From the NCBI RefSeq assembly GCF_001194135.2, contig NC_068982.1, forward strand, positions 128,913,852 through 128,977,851: 64,000 nucleotides of DNA, given 5' to 3'. Below the pieces are notes generated by a model. The model was given only the letters and a program-made list of their open reading frames with translations, searched no databases and had not been told where the DNA came from. Source of the stretch: Octopus bimaculoides. Taxonomy: Eukaryota. A program made the translations under genes and the position numbers. Shown here piece after piece: positions 2,269-57,153 of the stretch (position 1 is the stretch's first letter; every line of letters starts with the position of its first letter).

Positions 2269-2383
2269 TCATATATTATGAACAAGTACACAGTCCTTTG
2301 ACTTGTTGGATCCTGTCAAACCATCCAACCCATTCCAGCATGGAATATGGAGACTAAATGATGATGAAGATAGTATATATAAT

Positions 2384-2923
2384 TTATATGGAAAAATCCG
2401 TGGAAGAGGTAGGCCCAGGAAGACCTGGGCTGAGGTGGTGAGGCAAGACCTTCGTACATTGGGCCTCACCGAGGCGATGACTACGGACCGAGACCTTTGG
2501 AAATGGGCTGTGCGTGAGAAGACCCGGCAAGCCAAGTAAGATCGTTGCCAGTGCCCCTGGACTGGTTCTTGTGCGGGTGGCACATGAGATGCACCATTTT
2601 GAGCGTGGCCGTTGCCAGTACCGCCTGACTGGCTCCTGTAGGATTTTCGAGCGAGATCGTTGCCAGTGCCCCTGGACTGGCTTGTGCGGGTGGCACATAA
2701 AAGACACCATTTCGAGCGTGGCCGTTTTCGTGCGGGTGACACGTAAAAGCACCCACTACACTCTCTGAGTGGTTGGCGTTAGGAAGGGCATCCAGCTGTA
2801 GAAACTCTGCCAAATCAGACTGGAGCCTGGTGTTGCCATCCGGTTTCACCAGTCCTCAGTCAAATCGTCCAACCCATGCTAGCATGGAAAGCGGACGTTA
2901 AACGATGATGATGATGATGATGA
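2384..2923 (+). mobile_element. Young 5'-truncated RTE-clade LINE (ORF C-terminus, 3'UTR, (GAT)n tail)
   Basis: GKIRGRGRPRKTWAEVVRQDL...DRDLWKWAVREKTRQAK* resembles an RTE RT C-terminus; tail identical to the copies at 9001 and 32167. Confidence 0.85.
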
Positions 2924-7775: not shown

Positions 7776-9000
7776 GCATCTAACTATTGTCAATAGCATA
7801 AAATTTTTGGTAGCTTCAAAAAACAATTTTTTAATGGTAAAAGTTTGTTATTTCATAGCACATGAAGACAAAGACAGGGAAGAAAAATTATAACCATTTA
7901 TCAATAATATAATTACTGAGTTGTCAAATGTATATTCAGCTTTTCATTATTTTTGTTGCATCATTACGAATGCAATTATAGAGATGCATATATCACATAG
8001 ATTAGCATGCACACACACACACACACATTATCATCAATTTCATTTCAACACCTACTTTTCCATGCTTGCACAGGTTAGAGAGATTTTTTTGATGCAGATT
8101 TTCGTCACCAACTCTCATCTGTTTCCAAGCAAGGAAATATTTCCCTGTGGCTGGACTTGCTTTTGGTTAAGATTGGAAACAAAGGATATCATATATGTGA
8201 CAGTGATGCTCATTTTACAAGTATTACAGAATGTCAAGCCAAAGTACACAAACATACACTCATGTACACACAGGCATATGGACAGACACATATTATGGGC
8301 TTCTTTCAATTTCTATTAACCAAATCAACTTTGGTTAGCCTGGGGCTATAGGAGAAGACATTTGCCCTAGGTGGCTTGCAGAGGGACTGAACCCAAAACC
8401 ATGTAGTTAAGAAGCCACACCAACGACTGTACTTATGTGTGCGTGTGTATAAAACACACATTCACAAACGATAGAAAAATATATGATAATGTATGTGACC
8501 CACTCTCTCATCAATTTCAACCAAGAGAATTATCTGCTCATTGAATAACTGTGCAAGTGATTAAGTAGTCCACATGCATTTGTACTTTTTAGATAAAACC
8601 AGCATAGCACAATGGCAAAACTTTATCTATTAATCACAAGTAAAGTCTTCTACCTGTGACTTCTCCATATTTTCCATGTACCCGACTTCCTTCACATGAT
8701 TTGGGTTGTACAGAAAGATGTTCATGATTGAAAGCCAAGCTTATTTGGCCGTATGCTCATGCACAAATACACACATTTTGTATTTTTAGCTATAATGACA
8801 CAAAGATTATTTGCTAACTTAAGAAAGGATAGAAAAAAAAAAACAGTGTGTGTGCATATGGGCATATGGCCAAATAAGTTTGGCTCTCAGTCATAATGGC
8901 TCACTGCACAACACCTTGAGTAAGTATCTTGACTGTTTGCCTCTTTCTCTCTCATACATATATATGTGTGAGTGCATGTGAATGTGTGTGTGTGTGTGTG

Positions 9001-9158
9001 TGAGTGGTTGGCGTTAGGAAGGGCATCCAGCTGTAGAAACTCTGCCAAATCAGACTGGAGCCTGGTGTTGCCATCCGGTTTCACCAGTCCTCAGTCAAAT
9101 CGTCCAACCCATGCTAGCATGGAAAGCGGACGTTAAACGATGATGATGATGATGATGA
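9001..9158 (+). mobile_element. Young RTE 3' tail inserted at a (TG)n microsatellite
   Basis: Identical to the tail at 2766 onward. Confidence 0.88.
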
Positions 9159-46000: not shown

Positions 46001-46451
46001 TCATGTTGCTGTGAAACAGAAATGACTGATTCAGATTTGACTTGTTCTTCTGAAACTGACTGCAATTCACTCAACTGACTTTGATCTGGGATTTGTATCT
46101 GGGAAGCTGCTCTAGCACTGATTGGTGATTCTATGTCAGCTTTTTGAATACTATCTTTAATTATTTGTGATGTGACCTGGAACTCAGCAATTTGCTTCTG
46201 ACTAATATCAGTAGTTGATTCTGCTTCACCAGTCAGAACCATCTCCACGGTTTTAGCAGTGTGATATTGCTTTTCAACTACACTAGTTCCTGGCAATTCA
46301 GTAGAAACTTCAGCAACTGAAGTCTCTTCTTGAATCAATTTCTTAACTTCTTCATAAGACAATTGCTTCAATTCAGTTTCTTCCAACACTGGTCTTGGAG
46401 ATGGAGCTTCCTGTGATGAAGCTTCTTCACTATCAGGAATATATTCATATG
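43071..46451 (-). CDS. Titin-like giant exon L (3381 nt): E/V/T-rich 90-aa modules plus terminal Ig9
   Basis: tgcag|CA TAT GAA...GTA TTG T|gtaagt; phase 1 to 1; 1126 uninterrupted codons; EEVFPEDQGLYSVIATNEFG. Confidence 0.95.
44000..45760 (-). repeat. Coding 270-bp (90-aa) module, 3 conserved plus several degenerate copies
   Basis: Anchor 'actgttggttgt' at 45176, 45446 and 45716; diverged P...(A/S)K...E copies continue toward 44000. Confidence 0.85.
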
Positions 46452-48559
46452 CTGCAATATTGAAAATAAAGAGATTAGACTTATGAACTCATTTTTACCT
46501 ACATATACTGAAACTATGAAGTTTGTAATTTTTCACCAGCTAATGATTAATCAATCAATTATTTGTACAGCTAATTAAGAAAATTTCTGTAAAATTACAA
46601 CTTTAAAATACAAAATATATAAATAGATAAATAAATAAATAATTAAATTATTCATTTTCAGTTACACATTTTTGTTGTTGTTTCATATTGAAATAAAATT
46701 CATAAGACATTCCAAAAGCTTACTAATCAACATAGAGATAAAATTTACAATGCAAGTTAATAGATGAGAAGCTGTTCATTTTGTCATGCAAAAAAAAAAA
46801 ATTATGATTAAACATCAAGGATGAATAATGAATGAGCAAAAAACAAAAATAGTAGCTGAGTGATTAAATCACAAATGAAAACTATACAATGAAAGCTCAA
46901 AGAAATATTAAAAGAAATTTGATAAAATTTATATGTATAGTAATGTATTCTATACCACTTTATTTCTTTTTTTTAATAAGTTTATAAACTCAGTTATTTA
47001 AGAAATTTGTAAGCAGTTCATAAACATAATTTACCATTAAAATGAAATTATTCTATCACTTGTAAGCATTAACAGTAGTTTTCATTAAATTTTTACAGTT
47101 ACATAATTTGTAAAATCAATAAATTTTGTTTTGCTTATGTTTTCTTTTCCATGAAAGCTTCTTTTTAATTAATAATTTCTAAGTTTCTATTTCTATTCAC
47201 TACATTCTCTTCAGATGTAGATTTTCATGAGATTTCATGTTGAGATTCTCTTTGAAGTAATTACAAAACCAGACACAGAAGCTTGGTGCAGGCTCCTGCT
47301 GGCTAACTCCTATCAAACCGTCCAACCCATGCCAGAATGGAAGAAGGATATTAAACGATAATGATGATAAGGATGATTATGAAATATCAACTGCATTGGC
47401 TTAAAGTTTAACATGACAGATTAAACTTTATTTTCAATTAATACATCCATGTATGCATACTCAATACACAATATACATTTCATATTTATTCTAAAATATT
47501 TATGTTATCTACTTTGCTTTAACCATTCTAATTATTCAATTTTATTTGTAAACTACATGGGGAAGAAAAACAATGACAAAGTCACCACTAAACATTTCAT
47601 TGTTGATTTGTGGTATATGAGTGTGTACCATATTGTGAATGTGTGTGTGTGTTTATGCATGCATGTGCACATTCATGCAAATATCTACATATGTACTAAG
47701 TCACCAAGATATATAGATCAGAAAGAGAACAATTTTGTTTCACTGACATTCACAAAAGAAAAGGACTGAAAATATGTGAGATGAGGAATTTGTCTACTAT
47801 AATAATGGGCATTGAAACTCAGTGTCATTACAAATTATGATTTAACATTGTTTTCATCATGTTATAAATGTTGTAAGCAAGAATGATTGACTATTGATGA
47901 AAAAGATAAATATTTCTTAGAATTAATAGTAACACAGATACTTTGTTTCACACCTCAAGATAATAAATATTTAAAAAGTAGACGGCTTCAAATATTTAAA
48001 GGAAAGATTAGATGAGAAGCTCAGTGTTTCAGAGTGATAAAAGAGATACTTTTAAAATTTTATCATCGTATCATTTGCATTATTTCTTAACACAAGCATT
48101 TAATTTATCTTTCAGGTATTCATTTCACTGATTAGACATATTTGCACTTGAAAGTAAATCTAACATTTTGCAGATATGGTATAGCTTGTTGTGGCTGAAG
48201 ATTAAAATTAAAGTTTAAATGCAAGATCTTAAATGTAATTTATTTTTTGGGGGGAGGAGGGGATAACAACAAGACTTTGAGATCACTATTGCAAGTAGAA
48301 CCACATATTACAAGAATTATCACAAGTTCCTTGATACCATAACCCTGAAGTATGAAGACAAGTAAACTAGAAGAGATGCAAGGCACCATCTAAAAATGAA
48401 TGTCCATCTAGTTTTAAGAATAGCAAAGAGGAGGACCCAGTAAAGTGGAAGATATGCTTTATGTGGAATTAGAATGTATAAATGAAATTAGGGGAAGTTA
48501 AACATTAGAGATTAGAAGGCCATATTTCATAGAAATTGGGAGATGTGTATGAAAGACAT

Positions 48560-50164: not shown

Positions 50165-51929
50165 ATTCTATTTCCAAATACGCTCTACTAACAGCAGTAC
50201 CTAGAGCATTGGTTGCTTCACATTTATATTCACCAGCATCTTGTGGGAATACTTCAGAAATCAGTAAAGAACAACTTCCAGTTTCCTTATTGTATATAGA
50301 TTTGAAATCTTGGTTTTCGGAAATAGGTACTTCCTCGTGGTACCACACTATTTCTGGCATTGGCTGACCATCGATTTCACAGTAAAATTTTACTTCTTCA
50401 CCATCCATAACTTTCAATGATGTCAAATGCCAAGTAAATATTGGTGCTTTACCAGCTTTCTCAACAACTTCTTTTTCAACTGGTTTCTCTTTCTCTGTTA
50501 TTTCTTCCTTTATGACCTCTTCAACTACTGGCTGTTCCTCTTTTTTCAAAACAATTGTTTCACGAGAAACTGAAACCATATCTACTGTTTGCGCAGGTAT
50601 TTCAGCTACTTCTACAACTACTGGTTTATCAATTTGTGCATGTATTTCGACTACTTCTACAACTGGTGCATCAGTTTGAGCAGGTATTTCGACAATTTCT
50701 ACAACTGGTACATCAGTTTGTGCAGGCATTTCAACAACTTCAACTGGTACATCAGTTTGTGTAGGTATTTCAACTGCTTCTACAGCTGGTACATCAGTTT
50801 GTGTAGGTATTTCGACTGCTTCTCCAACTAGCACATCAGCTTGTGCAAGTATTTCAACTGCTTTTACAACTGGTACATCAGTTTGTGCAGGTATTTCTAC
50901 AACTTCAAGTGGTACATCAGTTTGTGCAGGTATTTCAACTGCTTCTGNNNNNNNNNNNNNNNNNNNNNNNNNNNNNNNNNNNNNNNNNNNNNNNNNNNNN
51001 NNNNNNNNNNNNNNNNNNNNNNNNNNNNNNNNNNNNNNNNNNNNNNNNTACAACTGGTACATCAGTTTGTGCAGGTATTTCTACAACTTCAAGTGGTACA
51101 TCAGTTTGTGCAGGTATTTCAACTGCTTCTACAGCTGGTACATCAGTTTGTGTAGGTATTTCAACTGCTTCTCCAACTAGCACATCAGCTTGTGCAAGTA
51201 TTTCAACTGCTTTTACAACTGGTACATCAGTTTGTGCAGGTATTTCTACAACTTCAAGTGGTACATCAGTTTGTGCAGGTATTTCAACTGCTTCTGAAAC
51301 TGGTGCATCAACTGTATCAGGGAGCAGAACTACTTGAACCTCAGGTGACTTCATTTTCATAACATGCTCCTTAACTTCAACTTCAATTCTTTGAGGTTGA
51401 AGAACTGGCTGTATTTCTTTCTGTGAAAGAACTGCAGGTTCACTTTCAGGTTGTTCTTTATGAAGTATTTCAATTGTTTCTTTATGGATGTTTTCACGTT
51501 CAATAACTACATCGTCCTTAGCAGGAATTTCTTCGGAAGTTATGTGAGTTGATTCATGAATTTCAGTTCTAGTTTCAGTCACGGGTTCACTAACTTGGAA
51601 TCGTAACTCTACAGGTGTAGATTTTTCTTTTTGATCTACTGTTAAAGTAGTAGTATGTTTTTCAGTAGCTTTTACATCAGCTGGAACTTCTTCAGTCTGT
51701 TCAAAATAAGAAGTTGTTGTAGATATTGTTCTAATTTCCTCTGTCTGAGTAACTTCCTCAGGTGCATCATAAAATAGGTCAGTTTCAGATTCTCTTCGAT
51801 CATCACATTGAAACTCTACATGTTCTTGATAGACAGTTTCATCAGGTAATTCTACTATTTGCGGCTGATCAACTATAATGGTTTGTTTATGTGTTTCATC
51901 AGATTCAATAGCTTCACTACCAGATGAAG
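50165..51929 (-). CDS. Titin-like exon K: acidic linker, 13-14-aa repeats, terminal Ig8; interrupted by an N gap at 50948..51048
   Basis: tcag|CT TCA TCT GGT...ATA GAA T|gtaagt; phase 1 to 1; open frames on both sides of the gap; the 1-nt frame offset is attributable to the gap estimate. Confidence 0.9.
50590..51300 (-). repeat. Coding 39-42-bp repeat (EAVEIPAQTDVPVV-like) with a 165-bp higher-order unit
   Basis: Repeated acatcagtttgtgcaggtatttc; higher-order anchors 'gcttct' ending at 51130 and 51295. Confidence 0.9.
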
Positions 51930-53326
51930 CTGAAATGAATTAAAACGCAAAAATATTTAAATGTATGTAAATTAATGTTTGACCACCACAAGAAACTAAC
52001 AGTGATTATCTTTCGCAGATAAATGGATATGATTAGCAAATGACGAAATATGAAATAAATGATTAGTAAATATAAACACAGATGGAAAGTAATTTGAAAA
52101 TATTCACACAAGAGAATTCGTGAAAAAATGGAATGTTATTTAACGTATTTATTGATTTGATTGTGTCATTATCAAGTTATCTTAAATAGAGGTATGTTAG
52201 TATAAATTGCAATTCTTGCAATTTAAAAAAATATTTTTGGTCAATCCAATTAAAATATATCATTTGATTATTTATCTTCTTGACATAGACGTTTTTTTCA
52301 CATAAACCTCATGGATTAGAGATTTCACTTACAGTAAGTTTACTAACATAAGCAAAGCAGCTATTTTAACTCAGTTTTGAAAATCTAAGTCTTCCACTCA
52401 TTCTGTTGATAAATTCAGTACAAAGTCAGTGGGATACAAATGATACACTTCAGGCTATTAAAACACTTATATCCAATAGCTTTTTCAGTATCCTTTATCT
52501 ATTTCCCATTTGTAAATAGTAAAAATTCCAAGAGAGCCTAAAACAGATTATTAAAATTCAAAGATTGCTGCAGTCTAATGACTAAAACAAGTAAAAGATT
52601 AAAGATTTAAAAAAGCATAATATTATGGAAACACACGCACTGTCTAATCATATATTTCCTTGATTATAAGAACATTTATATAAAACATTTTTCTAAACAT
52701 TTTCAAAGTATATTTTCTGTCTTTTCATAATTTTAACTTACTTGTATTCTATCTTTATATTTATGAATGAAGCATTACTAAGTCACAGAAATAGTTGAGC
52801 AAACAGATTAACCCTTTTGCATTTAAACTGGCCCTTTATCCAGCCCTAATATTATAACTGTTTTATGTTCAAACTAGTTGGATCCAACCTCTCACACCTA
52901 TCTTACAACATCATTTTAAAAATAAACTATCACATCATTGAAATCTTGAAGCTACAAGATAACACACTATTACTACAAAATGATGTGAATAAATTAAGCA
53001 TTACATTTGGCAGAGTAATCTGAAGGCTAAAGGGTTAAATGCTTCACTGTTTTCTTTGTGTTCTAAATTCAGCTCTCAACAGAATCAACTTTACCTTTCA
53101 TCCCAGATGACAATAAAATAAATCCTGGTAATACGGAAGTCAATTGGATCAACTACACCTCTAATCCAATGAAAAGTGGGTTTATATCTAATGAAATAAT
53201 TCAATAATGATAATGGGAATTCAATAATGATAATGAATTAATAAAATTTGTTAGTATATTAAATAAAATAAATGGAAAATGACACCAAAACAATTTTATA
53301 AAGATCTTTGTAAAAAGTAAACTTAC

Positions 53327-55117: not shown

Positions 55118-56454
55118 CTGAAAAATATTTAAAGGTAAATATATAGCAATGCAAACGGGCTGGTTTTTGCATATTTGTGTATAAACAAATTAAATGCAAA
55201 TATTTACTTGATCAGTTTATTCAAAGGCTGACTGAGCAAAGATACTAAGTGAAGAGTACAGTAATTTATCTGGGATTATTTCATCTAATTAAAAAAATGC
55301 ATTATTAATTTAATATCAGTTTATTTCACTGTGATAAAGCTGCTAACTTATGGGATAGGGGAGGATTCAGTTAGATCAGACCAAGTAAGTCTGGTACTAA
55401 ACAATCTCAGATGTACTGAAGGTAGTCAACCCTTACAAGATTTCAAATCAAATCATAGAAGATGAACTTAAATACAGACAAATTATTTAATCTATTGCTC
55501 AACCATTTCTGCTAACTGACCTATTTTGTTATTTACTTGATACTAAAGTCACTAGAATTCATTTATAGTGAAAAGTCAAAAACCAAATGTTGTTGGTCGT
55601 AGTAACTGTTATGATATATCAGCTTAAGAGTCATGATAAGAGTACCAGACTAAACATCTTCCAGAAATTAGTTTGGTCTCAATTTCTGGGTTTCAATTTG
55701 ATTGGGCTAAACTTAACTTGTTGTTTTTCTCGAGTTGATATAACAGGGTACTAATCAAACACAGGTGACTAAAAACTATACAATTCCCCTTTAAATTTCT
55801 GGCCTTGTACCACTGAGAAAAATTATAATAGTATATTGTCAACAAATTTCTAAACATCTCATGTGATTAAAACTATACAACTTCCCTTCAAATTTGTGGC
55901 CTTGTACCAAGATGAAAATTCATAATAAGATATTAACTACCAATTTCTAAAAATCCTTTTAAATTAATTCATTTTATAAAATATTTCTATTTTTTAAAAA
56001 AATAGAAAGATACTGATTAAAGCCAAAATCTCAGTTTTGTTGAATTTTAGATTTAAAAATTTATCAAATTAATAGATGCCCTAGAAACAGTATTAGATTA
56101 AAATAATGACATGTATAATGTTCATAACATATATATACAACTGTGGAAGGGTGCCAGTTGTAATATTTTGTCTCAGAGAAACTTCTCTCTCAGAGATGAT
56201 TCTCTGAACAAAACATTAATGCTGTTGCTTTACCAGGTGTGTACATACACTATGAATATTTACACACAGCATTATGAAAAGAAATCTGTTGAAATTATCA
56301 ACTAAATTTAACTCAGTTCTTGTTTCATGAAAATAATCTTATTATTCTTATTCTTTTAGCATTATTGATATCATCCTAATATGATCAAAATAATATTAAA
56401 TGAAGGTGAGAATTTAAAATGTATCCTATAAAACAAAATAACTATATTACTCAC

Positions 56455-57153
56455 TTTCAACAATAACAGTTGTGGAAGTAACAGATTCTCCATAAATGTT
56501 TCTGGCATGGCAAGTATATTCTCCTGCATCTTCTGGATAGACTTCAGTAATAATCAACTTACATCTACCAGTTTCTATTTCAAATGTTATCTGGAAATCA
56601 TTATTTGGTACAATCTCAATTGAGTCTTTATACCAAGTAATTTTGGGTTCAGGATAAGCATTCATTCTGCAAGTCAATACAACTTGAGAACCATCTTGAA
56701 CAGTTTGTGGTTGCAAAGGTTCCACAAATTCAGGAGGAATAGCAGCTGGTTTGGCTTTCTGATCTTTCTTCTGAACAGGAATAATGACTTCTTCTTTCTT
56801 TGGTTCATGAACTGTCAGTCGAGCAGATGTAGCTGCTTGTCCATATTGATTGATAGCCATGCAAACATAATCTCCTCGATCTTCTGGAAGAGCTTCCACG
56901 ATATGGAGACAAATATCTCCTGTCTCTGGGTTGTATGAAATGACATATTCATCATTGTTATCAATATTAGTCCCATTATGGAACCAAGAAACATGAGGAA
57001 CTGGTTTTCCAACAACTTTGCATATCATTTTTATTTCTTGGCCATCGACCACATCCATTGTTTCTAAGTCTTTTATAAAGTTTGGTGGCATAAAGTCCTC
57101 TACAGGAGGTTCCTCTTCTGTTTCAGGAGGTGGTGACATTTCTGCAGCAGGTT
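56455..57153 (-). CDS. Titin-like exon G: two I-set domains, Ig4 and Ig5
   Basis: tacag|AA CCT...GAA A|gtgagt; 699 nt, phase 1 to 1; two PP.F...W...(V/L)(Y)PED.G.Y.C.A.N.YG motifs. Confidence 0.95.

What the first reader, a model, noticed from the sequence alone, without database searches (positions are those of the whole stretch)
51757..51800. Near-canonical FFAT motif (ESETD-LFYDAPE) in exon K
Seen: codons at 51777..51757 give L-F-Y-D-A-P-E, preceded by DDRRESETD. Established: the FFAT consensus EFFDAxE with an upstream acidic tract binds the MSP domain of the ER proteins VAP-A/B. Aromatic residues are scarce in this linker, so the match stands out. Inference: the protein docks on ER/SR via VAP.
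Basis: partly seen in the sequence, partly recalled or inferred. Interest (0 to 1): 0.75.

Follow-up and report, generated by a model that had tools for sequence, protein, structure and literature searches.

The report
FFAT-type motif in titin-like linker
A giant titin-like muscle gene encodes, in a floppy acidic linker, a short peptide (LFYDAPE) that closely matches the tag many proteins use to dock onto the endoplasmic reticulum, so it may tie muscle filaments to the calcium-storing membranes, but binding has not been tested.

Summary
Window 51804..51757 (- strand) encodes DDRRESETDLFYDAPE, inside a spliced coding exon (51929..50165) of a titin-like gene made of I-set Ig domains and long E/V/P/K-rich linkers.

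For the VAP-docking reading:
- The motif scores 2.0 on the published Mikitova & Levine 2012 scale, which is that paper's cut-off for detectable targeting.
- It differs from the validated VAP binder WDR44 (EFYDAPE) only at position 1. SNX2, also validated, has L at position 1.
- Shuffled linkers produce such a motif with P of about 0.003-0.01.
- AlphaFold2 predicts coil at the motif.
- The core F-[FY]-D-A-P-E-E is kept in four related genomes, across dS of about 1, with low pN against high pS.
- Three more FFAT-like motifs (TFEECIE, SFEDAAE, DFKECID) lie in a neighbouring linker exon. Their counterparts are kept in the one distant relative available (TFEECIE exactly; the other two with one or two core substitutions).

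Against it:
- The motif sits in a roughly 30-residue conserved block, so it is not an isolated island.
- Four more distant orthologous loci lack it at the equivalent site.
- VAP binding, cytosolic location and exon usage are untested.

Verdict: a plausible, lineage-restricted new member of the FFAT-motif class. The docking interpretation is partly supported.

The parts
51757..51777 (-). FFAT-type core L1-F2-Y3-D4-A5-P6-E7 (exon-K residues 52-58)
   Evidence: Translation. It scores 2.0 on the Mikitova & Levine 2012 scale. F, D, A, P and E are identical in L004, L001 and L003.
51778..51795 (-). Upstream acidic, phosphorylatable flank R-E-S-E-T-D (flank charge value 3.0). It contains a conserved Ser at -4 in the context R-x-x-S-x-x-[DE].
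   Evidence: The flank sequence diverges between clades (RESETD / KSSEAE / RSSEVE). It stays S/E-rich, and the Ser at -4 stays in place.
51691..51756 (-). Downstream conserved block EVTQTEEIRTISTTTSYFEQTE. It contains a second, weak aromatic motif (SYFEQTE, about 3.5 when scored by hand).
   Evidence: pN is 0.09-0.10 against pS 0.64-0.77. AlphaFold2 predicts a beta strand at residues 68-83, pLDDT about 69. The FFAT model does not explain this block.
50165..51929 (-). Exon K. It holds a linker of about 460 or more residues and one I-set Ig domain (about 50169-50441). It is interrupted by an assembly gap at 50948-51048.
   Evidence: Acceptor AG at 51931/51930. Donor GTAAGT at 50164-50159. Gap listed. 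Pfam I-set E=1.1e-21. Orthologous exons in L001, L003, L004.
39867..39887 (-). Second FFAT-like motif TFEECIE (flank SFESEE), score 2.0
   Evidence: It is identical in orthologue L009 (SFESED-TFEECIE), although a 37-residue indel lies just upstream.
39813..39833 (-). Weaker partner motif HFEECYQ, 18 residues after TFEECIE
   Evidence: The L009 orthologue has SFEECIH at the aligned place.
37665..37685 (-). Third FFAT-like motif SFEDAAE (flank VEVEEE), score 2.0. It is the same class as the validated FAF1 DFEDATE, ASNA1 EFEDAPD and TTC39B VFEDALE.
   Evidence: The L009 orthologue has APDEIE-TFEDAIE-PSDE. Validated examples are in PMC9213790 Table 1.
37614..37634 (-). Fourth FFAT-like motif DFKECID (flank EKESLE), score 2.5, 17 residues after SFEDAAE
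   Evidence: L009 has EDYEEC at the aligned place. It resembles the repeat modules SFEETLDINVEKP in L010 and TFRETLEVEK in L016/L017.
36210..40076 (-). Open frame of the neighbouring linker-plus-Ig exon that carries motifs 2-4 (exon start about 40059)
   Evidence: I-set at residues 1199-1286.
56450..57139 (-). Upstream exon of the same gene with two I-set Ig domains. It was used to name the gene family.
   Evidence: Pfam I-set E=3.4e-44. The best solved-structure matches are titin I65-I70 (3b43, E=2.5e-59) and a titin fusion construct (6fwx, E=6e-57). The next non-titin hit scores 6e-36.

Best explanation
The peptide is a genuine FFAT-type short linear motif in a disordered, acidic spring segment of a titin-like muscle protein.

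Proposed mechanism, all of it inferred:
- The S/E-rich tract upstream first contacts the basic face of the MSP domain of a VAP-family protein anchored in the ER/SR membrane. Phosphorylation of the conserved Ser at -4 may strengthen this contact.
- The core then locks in through F2, D4 and A5.
- This pins SR membrane to the elastic filament.
- At least three further FFAT-like motifs in the next-but-one linker exon would make the attachment multivalent.

The exon-K motif is specific to one lineage. It is present in the window's species, a close relative and a second clade at dS of about 1. It is absent from more distant orthologues.

Shown here: the sequence, the score, the excess over chance, conservation at the protein level, and predicted disorder. 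Inferred: cytosolic location, VAP binding and SR tethering.
For: 1. The sequence is as reported.

2. The score is 2.0 in the window and L004, 2.0 in L001 and 1.5 in L003. The scale is the published 2012 one. My version was re-tuned until it reproduced 28 of 30 published example scores. The paper's cut-off for detectable targeting is <=2.

3. The core equals validated binders apart from position 1:
- WDR44 has SESDTE-EFYDAPE and OSBP has DEDDEN-EFFDAPE.
- Validated SNX2 (LFAEATE) and TTC39B (VFEDALE) have a hydrophobic residue at position 1.
- A or M at position 1 did not reduce targeting in yeast.

4. Chance:
- Exon K is expected to hold 0.003 such motifs (whole-linker shuffles) or 0.010 (local shuffles).
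- Across the three linkers, 3 motifs at <=2.0 are observed against 0.04-0.07 expected, reached in 0 of 5000 shuffles.
- The motif blocks are not paralogous duplicates.

5. Selection: at dS 0.94-1.01, the block with the core has pN 0.09-0.18 against pS 0.64-0.78. The 20 residues upstream have pN 0.39-0.47 but stay S/E-rich.

6. The other motifs have conserved counterparts in L009 beside indels: TFEECIE exactly, SFEDAAE as TFEDAIE, and DFKECID as EDYEEC.

7. AlphaFold2 gives coil with pLDDT about 44 at the motif.

8. The Ig domains are closest to titin.
Against: - No binding data exist, and no complex model could be run.
- The score sits exactly on the 2012 cut-off. Position 1 is not acidic, and the flank carries an Arg.
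- The core is embedded in a roughly 30-residue conserved block. Its downstream part (TEEIRTISTTT[ST]YFEQT) is at least as constrained and is predicted to be a beta strand. The constraint may therefore belong to something larger.
- Four more distant orthologous loci keep the flanking blocks but have no FFAT at that place: IEFQIGKP in L010, TFEIQIGLP in L016/L017, IRVGVP in L012.
- The FEE[CT]-type motifs belong to a repeat module found in every super-repeat of distant relatives. That module could be structural.
- Cytosolic location, exon inclusion and the taxon are unverified.
- I could not obtain the later position-weight matrices.
Confidence: 0.5

Rival explanations
1. The conserved unit is the whole block of about 30 residues, F[FY]DAPEE-x3-TEEIRTISTTT[ST]YFEQT. 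It is kept for a reason other than VAP. It could be a binding site for another sarcomeric partner, or a beta-strand element that pairs with the second conserved T-rich block (residues 118-133). The FFAT resemblance would then be a by-product of an aromatic residue sitting in an acidic sequence.
For: - The downstream 22 residues are as constrained as the core, or more so: pN 0.09-0.10.
- AlphaFold2 pairs residues 68-83 with 118-133 as strands, with the highest pLDDT of the model, about 67-69.
- The T-rich block and the other blocks persist in distant orthologues that lack the FFAT core.
- The FEE[CT][IL][ED] motifs are part of longer repeat modules.
Against: - The core residues that are invariant are exactly the ones FFAT binding needs (F2, D4, A5, E7), and the variable one is the tolerant position 1.
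- The core itself is predicted to be coil, not strand.
- Independent, non-paralogous FxDAxE motifs recur in another linker and are conserved. This is far above chance.
- The AlphaFold2 confidence is low (mean pLDDT 43.8).
Confidence: 0.33
2. The motif is a chance match with no function of its own. It is retained in four related genomes only because the whole exon is under moderate purifying selection and the sampled divergence is limited.
For: - There is effectively one deep comparison: two pairs of close relatives.
- At the exon-wide amino-acid identity of roughly 64%, six conserved positions have a probability of about 0.07.
- The motif was noticed after the fact, in a 64-kb read.
- It is absent from deeper orthologues.
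Against: - Shuffle probabilities are 0.003-0.01 for exon K alone, and below 1/5000 for the set of three motifs at <=2.0.
- Local pN is well below the exon mean, while pS is high.
- Linkers of comparable length in L012 give no motif at <=3.0. Those in L010 give none at <=2.5.
Confidence: 0.15

Closest known systems
WDR44 (rabphilin-11) FFAT motif SESDTE-EFYDAPE, and OSBP FFAT motif DEDDEN-EFFDAPE
   Same: Core positions 2-7 are identical: FYDAPE in the window and L004, FFDAPE in L001 and L003. An S/E/D-rich tract lies upstream, and the segment is disordered. Both are experimentally confirmed VAP binders (PMC9213790 Table 1).
   Different: Position 1 is L, I or T instead of E. The flank is less acidic (charge value 3.0 or 2.0 rather than 4.5-5) and contains Arg or Lys. 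The host is a giant Ig-repeat muscle protein, not a lipid-transfer or Rab-effector protein.
SNX2 (DDDRED-LFAEATE) and TTC39B (LEADED-VFEDALE) FFAT-like motifs
   Same: They have a hydrophobic residue at position 1. Their published score is 2.0, the same as here, and they are still confirmed VAP interactors.
   Different: Their flanks are more acidic. They have only one aromatic residue, whereas the window motif has two (F, Y).
FAF1 (DFEDATE), ASNA1 (EFEDAPD) and protrudin (EFKDAIE) FFAT-like motifs
   Same: They are the same class as the neighbouring-exon motifs SFEDAAE/TFEDAIE and DFKECID. An acidic or basic residue at position 3 is tolerated.
   Different: These concern the additional motifs, not the one reported. 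None of the octopod-type motifs has been tested.
Obscurin - small ankyrin 1.5 link between sarcomere and sarcoplasmic reticulum
   Same: A giant Ig-repeat sarcomeric protein binds, through a non-domain segment, a small protein anchored in the SR membrane, and so positions the SR relative to the myofibrils (PMC2172649 abstract).
   Different: It uses a different motif, a different membrane receptor (ankyrin, not an MSP-domain protein) and a different giant protein. It is an analogy of function only, and for the window it is purely hypothetical.
Titin / invertebrate titin-like proteins with PEVK-like spring segments
   Same: I-set Ig domains closest to titin. E/V/P/K-rich linkers hundreds to more than 1000 residues long with internal repeats. 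Exon K starts and ends in phase 1, from its splice sites.
   Different: Only Ig domains and linkers lie in the window, with no Fn3 or kinase domain. Orthology to a particular named gene was not established. No paper in the held library links FFAT to titin.

Membership tests
FFAT / FFAT-like motif (VAP MSP-domain ligand) | Seven-residue core close to EFFDAxE with <=2 suboptimal elements (2012 scale). On the 2016 scale, <3 counts as strong. | tested here: met
   The window scores 2.0 (1.5 if Y3 is not penalised), L001 2.0, L003 1.5. I could not obtain the 2016/2019 matrices. My back-calculation from the published example scores gives about 1.5-2.0, and this is an inference.
FFAT / FFAT-like motif (VAP MSP-domain ligand) | Acidic tract in the six residues upstream | tested here: met
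   RESETD has 3 acidic residues, S, T and one R. Its charge value is 3.0, which costs a penalty of 0.5. The orthologues have 2.0. This is weaker than in the classic motifs. E58-E59 add acidity downstream.
FFAT / FFAT-like motif (VAP MSP-domain ligand) | Lies in an unstructured, non-helical segment | tested here: met
   AlphaFold2 with a 4-sequence alignment gives no secondary structure at residues 52-58 and a block pLDDT of 44. The alignment is shallow, so this is moderate evidence.
FFAT / FFAT-like motif (VAP MSP-domain ligand) | Exposed to the cytosol | tested here: inconclusive
   The Ig domains match titin far better than extracellular Ig proteins: 2.5e-59 against 6e-36. The N-terminus of the protein lies outside the window, so a signal peptide cannot be excluded.
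FFAT / FFAT-like motif (VAP MSP-domain ligand) | Critical residues conserved among orthologues more than neighbouring residues | tested here: inconclusive
   Across dS of about 1, the core is more conserved than the upstream 20 residues but not more than the downstream 22. It is absent at the orthologous place in L010, L012 and L016/L017.
FFAT / FFAT-like motif (VAP MSP-domain ligand) | [quoted passage not shown] | not testable with these tools
   No multimer prediction or wet assay is available. Structure prediction accepts only sequences from the window or from earlier searches.
Titin-like giant muscle protein | Tandem I-set Ig domains most similar to titin | tested here: met
   Pfam I-set hits in all four exons scanned. 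The top PDB matches are titin.
Titin-like giant muscle protein | Long, repeat-rich PEVK-like spring segments rich in E, V, P and K | tested here: met
   E+V+P+K make up 43-48% of the three linkers. Aromatic residues make up 1.5-3.4%. Internal repeats are visible.
Titin-like giant muscle protein | Fn3 domains, a C-terminal kinase and sarcomeric localisation | not tested
   These would lie outside the 64-kb window. No expression or localisation data are available.

The most novel reading that the evidence does not exclude
In one molluscan (octopod-type) lineage, the titin-like elastic filament carries a conserved array of at least four FFAT-type motifs: LFYDAPE, TFEECIE, SFEDAAE and DFKECID. These would recruit VAP-bearing sarcoplasmic reticulum directly onto the myofilament lattice. 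That would be an independently evolved counterpart of the vertebrate obscurin-ankyrin link. Stretch of the spring and phosphorylation of the conserved Ser at -4 could regulate it. The [ST]F[EKR]E[TC][LI][ED] module, repeated every 104 residues in distant relatives, would be the ancestral low-affinity version.
Probability: 0.25. Interest if true: 0.7.

Novelty: new member of a known kind. Interest (0 to 1): 0.45.

Why it matters
How invertebrate muscle positions its sarcoplasmic reticulum relative to the contractile lattice is poorly understood. The vertebrate solution is obscurin binding small ankyrin 1.5.

A VAP-binding motif array on a titin-like spring would be a simple, testable tether. 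It would also extend the list of VAP clients from lipid-transfer and trafficking proteins to a sarcomeric filament. In addition, it would be an example of a short linear motif arising in a fast-evolving disordered linker and then being retained.

If binding fails, the result still matters. It would show that a conserved, high-scoring FFAT look-alike can be part of a larger unrelated element.

Tried and rejected
**Later scoring matrices.** The Di Mattia 2020 Table EV4 is not held. Slee & Levine 2019 is not held by DOI or by PMC id. I used the 2012 table instead. My first reading of the garbled PDF table mis-scored several published examples. I re-tuned three entries (position 4 S/T/A/I/N, position 5 D/E/K/R, and the flank threshold at 0) until 28 of 30 published scores were reproduced.

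**Searches for orthologues.**
That search was wasted.
- An HMM of the exon-K linker against 1.84 billion representative proteins found only P0003. Sequence search cannot follow this linker further out, so distant orthologues had to be reached through the Ig domain.

**Paralogy.** A local alignment of the exon-K motif block against the other two linkers was not significant: score 38-44 against a shuffle mean of 40-42. The motifs are therefore not copies of one duplicated module.

**Other motif readings, by inspection only.**
- Crk-type pY-D-x-P is rejected, because the Tyr is Phe in L001 and L003.
- The LC3-interacting [FWY]xx[LIV] motif does not fit.
- The PP2A-B56 LxxIxE motif does not fit.
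- Clathrin and AP-2 ear motifs do not fit.

**Identifying the source.**
- A look-up of the window's own 230-residue Ig ORF found nothing.
- A text search for the run and assembly accessions found no paper.
- The taxa of the window and of all loci therefore remain unverified.

**Literature.** The two papers that hold both 'FFAT' and 'titin' are unrelated. Of the 43 papers with 'FFAT' and 'sarcoplasmic reticulum', none of the 15 listed concerns a sarcomeric FFAT protein, judging by title and abstract.

Full report
**1. What is in the sequence**

The peptide lies 52 residues into a coding exon:
- The exon begins after a pyrimidine tract and an AG at 51931/51930.
- It ends at a GTAAGT donor at 50164-50159.
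- It has a single open frame and ends in an I-set Ig domain.
- An assembly gap at 50948-51048 interrupts a run of roughly 11-13-residue AVEIPAQTDVP-type repeats.

The same strand carries a series of exons that encode I-set Ig domains and very long linkers rich in E, V, P and K. Two of these are open frames of 1159 and 1289 codons. The two-Ig exon at 57139-56450 matches titin far better than any other solved protein: 3b43 scores E=2.5e-59, and the first non-titin hit scores 6e-36. The gene is therefore a titin-like giant muscle protein. I could not verify the taxon or name the orthologue.

**2. Is it a good FFAT match?**

I took the published scoring table of Mikitova & Levine 2012 (PMC3261905, Table S2A). 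After re-tuning three ambiguous entries, my implementation reproduces 28 of the paper's 30 example scores.
- RESETD-LFYDAPE scores 2.0. The penalties are 0.5 for the flank, 1 for L at position 1 and 0.5 for Y at position 3.
- The orthologous KSSEAE-IFFDAPE scores 2.0, and RSSEVE-TFFDAPE scores 1.5.
- The authors found targeting barely detectable at 2 and lost at about 2.5-3. They counted 76 human motifs at <=2.

I could not obtain the later matrices. A VAP review tabulates 2016-algorithm scores for confirmed binders (PMC9213790, Table 1):

| Protein | Flank and core | Score |
|---|---|---|
| WDR44 | SESDTE-EFYDAPE | 0.5 |
| OSBP | DEDDEN-EFFDAPE | 0 |
| SNX2 | DDDRED-LFAEATE | 2.0 |
| TTC39B | LEADED-VFEDALE | 2.0 |
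| FAF1 | SDSDGD-DFEDATE | 1.0 |
| ASNA1 | WGVEAE-EFEDAPD | 2.0 |

The window motif is therefore identical to WDR44 at positions 2-7. Its one real deviation, a hydrophobic residue at position 1, also occurs in validated binders. A or M at position 1 did not reduce targeting in the yeast assay.

**3. Chance**

The linker is poor in aromatic residues: 4 F and 3 Y in 456 residues.

| Null model | Exon K linker, motifs at <=2.0 | Three linkers together, motifs at <=2.0 |
|---|---|---|
| Whole-linker shuffles | 0.0028 expected | 0.04 expected |
| Shuffles within 20-residue blocks | 0.010 expected | 0.07 expected |
| Reversed sequences | none at <=2.5 | none at <=2.5 |
| Observed | 1 | 3, plus one at 2.5; reached in 0 of 5000 shuffles |

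Scanning about 3600 coding positions of the gene turned up three more motifs, all in the exon at 40076-36210:
- SFESEE-TFEECIE, score 2.0.
- VEVEEE-SFEDAAE, score 2.0.
- EKESLE-DFKECID, score 2.5.

The exon-K block shows no significant similarity to the other linkers. The motifs are therefore not copies of one duplicated segment.

**4. Conservation**

Protein searches gave orthologous exons from two groups:
- A close relative: L004-L008, dS 0.12.
- A second clade: L001/L002 and L003/L009, dS 0.94-1.01, dN about 0.26, omega about 0.25.

All four sequences keep F-[FY]-D-A-P-E-E. Position 1 varies (L, I, T). The flank sequence changes but stays S/E-rich, with a Ser at -4 in the context R-x-x-S-x-x-[DE].

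Sliding windows along the exon show three regimes:
- The 20 residues upstream are the most divergent part of the exon (pN 0.39-0.47).
- The block from the core through TEEIRTISTTT[ST]YFEQT has pN 0.09-0.18 with pS 0.64-0.78. This is constraint on the protein, not on the DNA.
- The core is not an isolated island, because the downstream 22 residues are equally conserved.

In L009 the other motifs have conserved counterparts next to indels: SFESED-TFEECIE..EDSFEEC, and TFEDAIEPSDE..EDYEEC.

A profile of the linker found nothing further among 1.84 billion representative proteins. A search with the exon's Ig domain did reach more distant orthologous loci: L010, L011, L012/L013 and L016/L017. These keep several flanking blocks, including DEVHKETIEI, a T-rich block, EEVP, PVE[LM], H[KS]ETIEI and QRIE[VI]E. 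At the motif's place they have IEFQIGKP, TFEIQIGLP or IRVGVP. L011 does not cover that part of the exon.

The canonical motif is therefore restricted to one lineage. Either it was gained there or it was lost elsewhere.

In those distant species the downstream exon carries a recurring [ST]F[EKR]E[TC][LI][ED] module. In L016/L017 it recurs every 104 residues. This module resembles the window's DFKECID.

**5. Structure context**

AlphaFold2 on the four-sequence alignment is low-confidence overall (mean pLDDT 43.8).
- The motif (residues 52-58) is coil with pLDDT about 44.
- Residues 68-83 and 118-133 are predicted as strands, with the best confidence of the model, about 67-69.

The motif thus meets the 'not helical' criterion. 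The downstream conserved block looks like a separate element.

**6. Interpretation**

I judged the motif against the four published criteria: cytoplasmic, not helical, conserved above its neighbours, and <=2 missing elements.
- It clearly meets two: not helical and <=2 missing elements.
- It probably meets one: cytoplasmic, by its titin-like nature.
- It half meets one: conservation.

The best-supported reading is a real, lineage-restricted FFAT-type motif that docks an MSP-domain protein of the ER/SR (confidence about 0.5). It would be one of several such motifs on the same protein.

There are two rivals. In the main one (about 0.33), the roughly 30-residue block is conserved for another partner or for a beta-strand interaction. 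The other (about 0.15) is chance plus the general constraint on the exon.

Nothing here tests binding. The held literature contains no report that links FFAT motifs to titin-like or sarcomeric proteins. The nearest functional analogy is the obscurin-small ankyrin 1.5 link between sarcomere and SR.

From my own knowledge, not tested here: cephalopod obliquely striated fibres have SR tubules aligned with the Z elements. If that holds for this species, a filament-SR tether would be anatomically sensible.

**7. Verdict**

- This is a new member of a known kind of motif, in an unexpected host protein.
- It has moderate interest and a cheap, decisive experiment: peptide against MSP domain, with F-to-A and KD/MD controls.

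Noticed in passing
window 50166-51330 (- strand); L004 1046-2275: The second half of the exon-K linker is a tandem array of roughly 11-13-residue units ([EA]AVEIPAQTDVPV-like). The assembly gap at 50948-51048 falls inside it, so the copy number in the window is unknown. The close relative L004 has a longer, ungapped array. The second clade (L001/L003) has no such array, so the expansion is recent.
   Followed up: partly
window 51870-51929 (- strand): The first 15-20 codons of exon K (ASSGSEAIESDETHK) have very low synonymous divergence, pS 0.10-0.21 against an exon mean of about 0.54 at the same distance. This suggests constraint on the nucleotides next to the acceptor, for example splicing enhancers.
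   Followed up: no
window 46390-46452 (- strand); L009 13004-; L010 10553-; L011 1976-; L014 10331-; L016 9948-12596; L017 10433-14536: The next linker exon starts with a block AYEY[IVM][PA]D[ST]EEAS...SSPKP. It is conserved in every related locus, including the GC-rich and apparently much more distant L014 (FEYVPDSEEASQSQ). It is far more deeply conserved than the FFAT motif, and its function is unknown.
   Followed up: no
L016 16967-19151; L017 16896-18768; L010 17739, 18684, 19218: In distant orthologues the downstream giant exon is built of super-repeats. Each contains an acidic F-motif: EEVTME-TFRETLE every 312 nt (104 residues) in L016/L017, and ETTEVS-SFEETL[DE]-INVEKP in L010. They score 3.0 on the 2012 FFAT scale, and they resemble the window's DFKECIDITVEPE.
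   Followed up: partly
window 51531-51728 (- strand), exon-K residues 68-83 and 118-133: AlphaFold2 predicts two conserved T-rich blocks (TISTTTSYFEQTEEVP and VTETRTEIHESTHITS) as long strands. They have the highest confidence of an otherwise disordered model (pLDDT about 67-69).
   Followed up: no
window 51787-51798 (- strand): A Ser four residues before the motif is kept in all four octopod-type sequences. Arg sits at -3 from it and an acid at +3 (R-x-x-S-x-x-[DE]). By eye this fits both basophilic-kinase and CK2-type consensus sites, so it is a possible phospho-switch for the acidic tract.
   Followed up: no
window 38200-39100 (- strand), within ORF 36207-40076: There are six near-identical repeats of about 47 residues (PEVIESKGVEQH[VM][IV]TEKH[IV]QNVAVLPE[DV]LP.ENV.IFPREPSPVETT) in the 1289-codon linker exon.
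   Followed up: no
window 2269-2855, 8890-9090, 31692-32301 (- strand ORFs): Three copies of a repetitive element share the ORF fragment GLVKPDGNTRLQSDLAEFLQLDALPNANHS. It is probably an interspersed repeat and is unrelated to the gene. The third copy is cut by an assembly gap.
   Followed up: no
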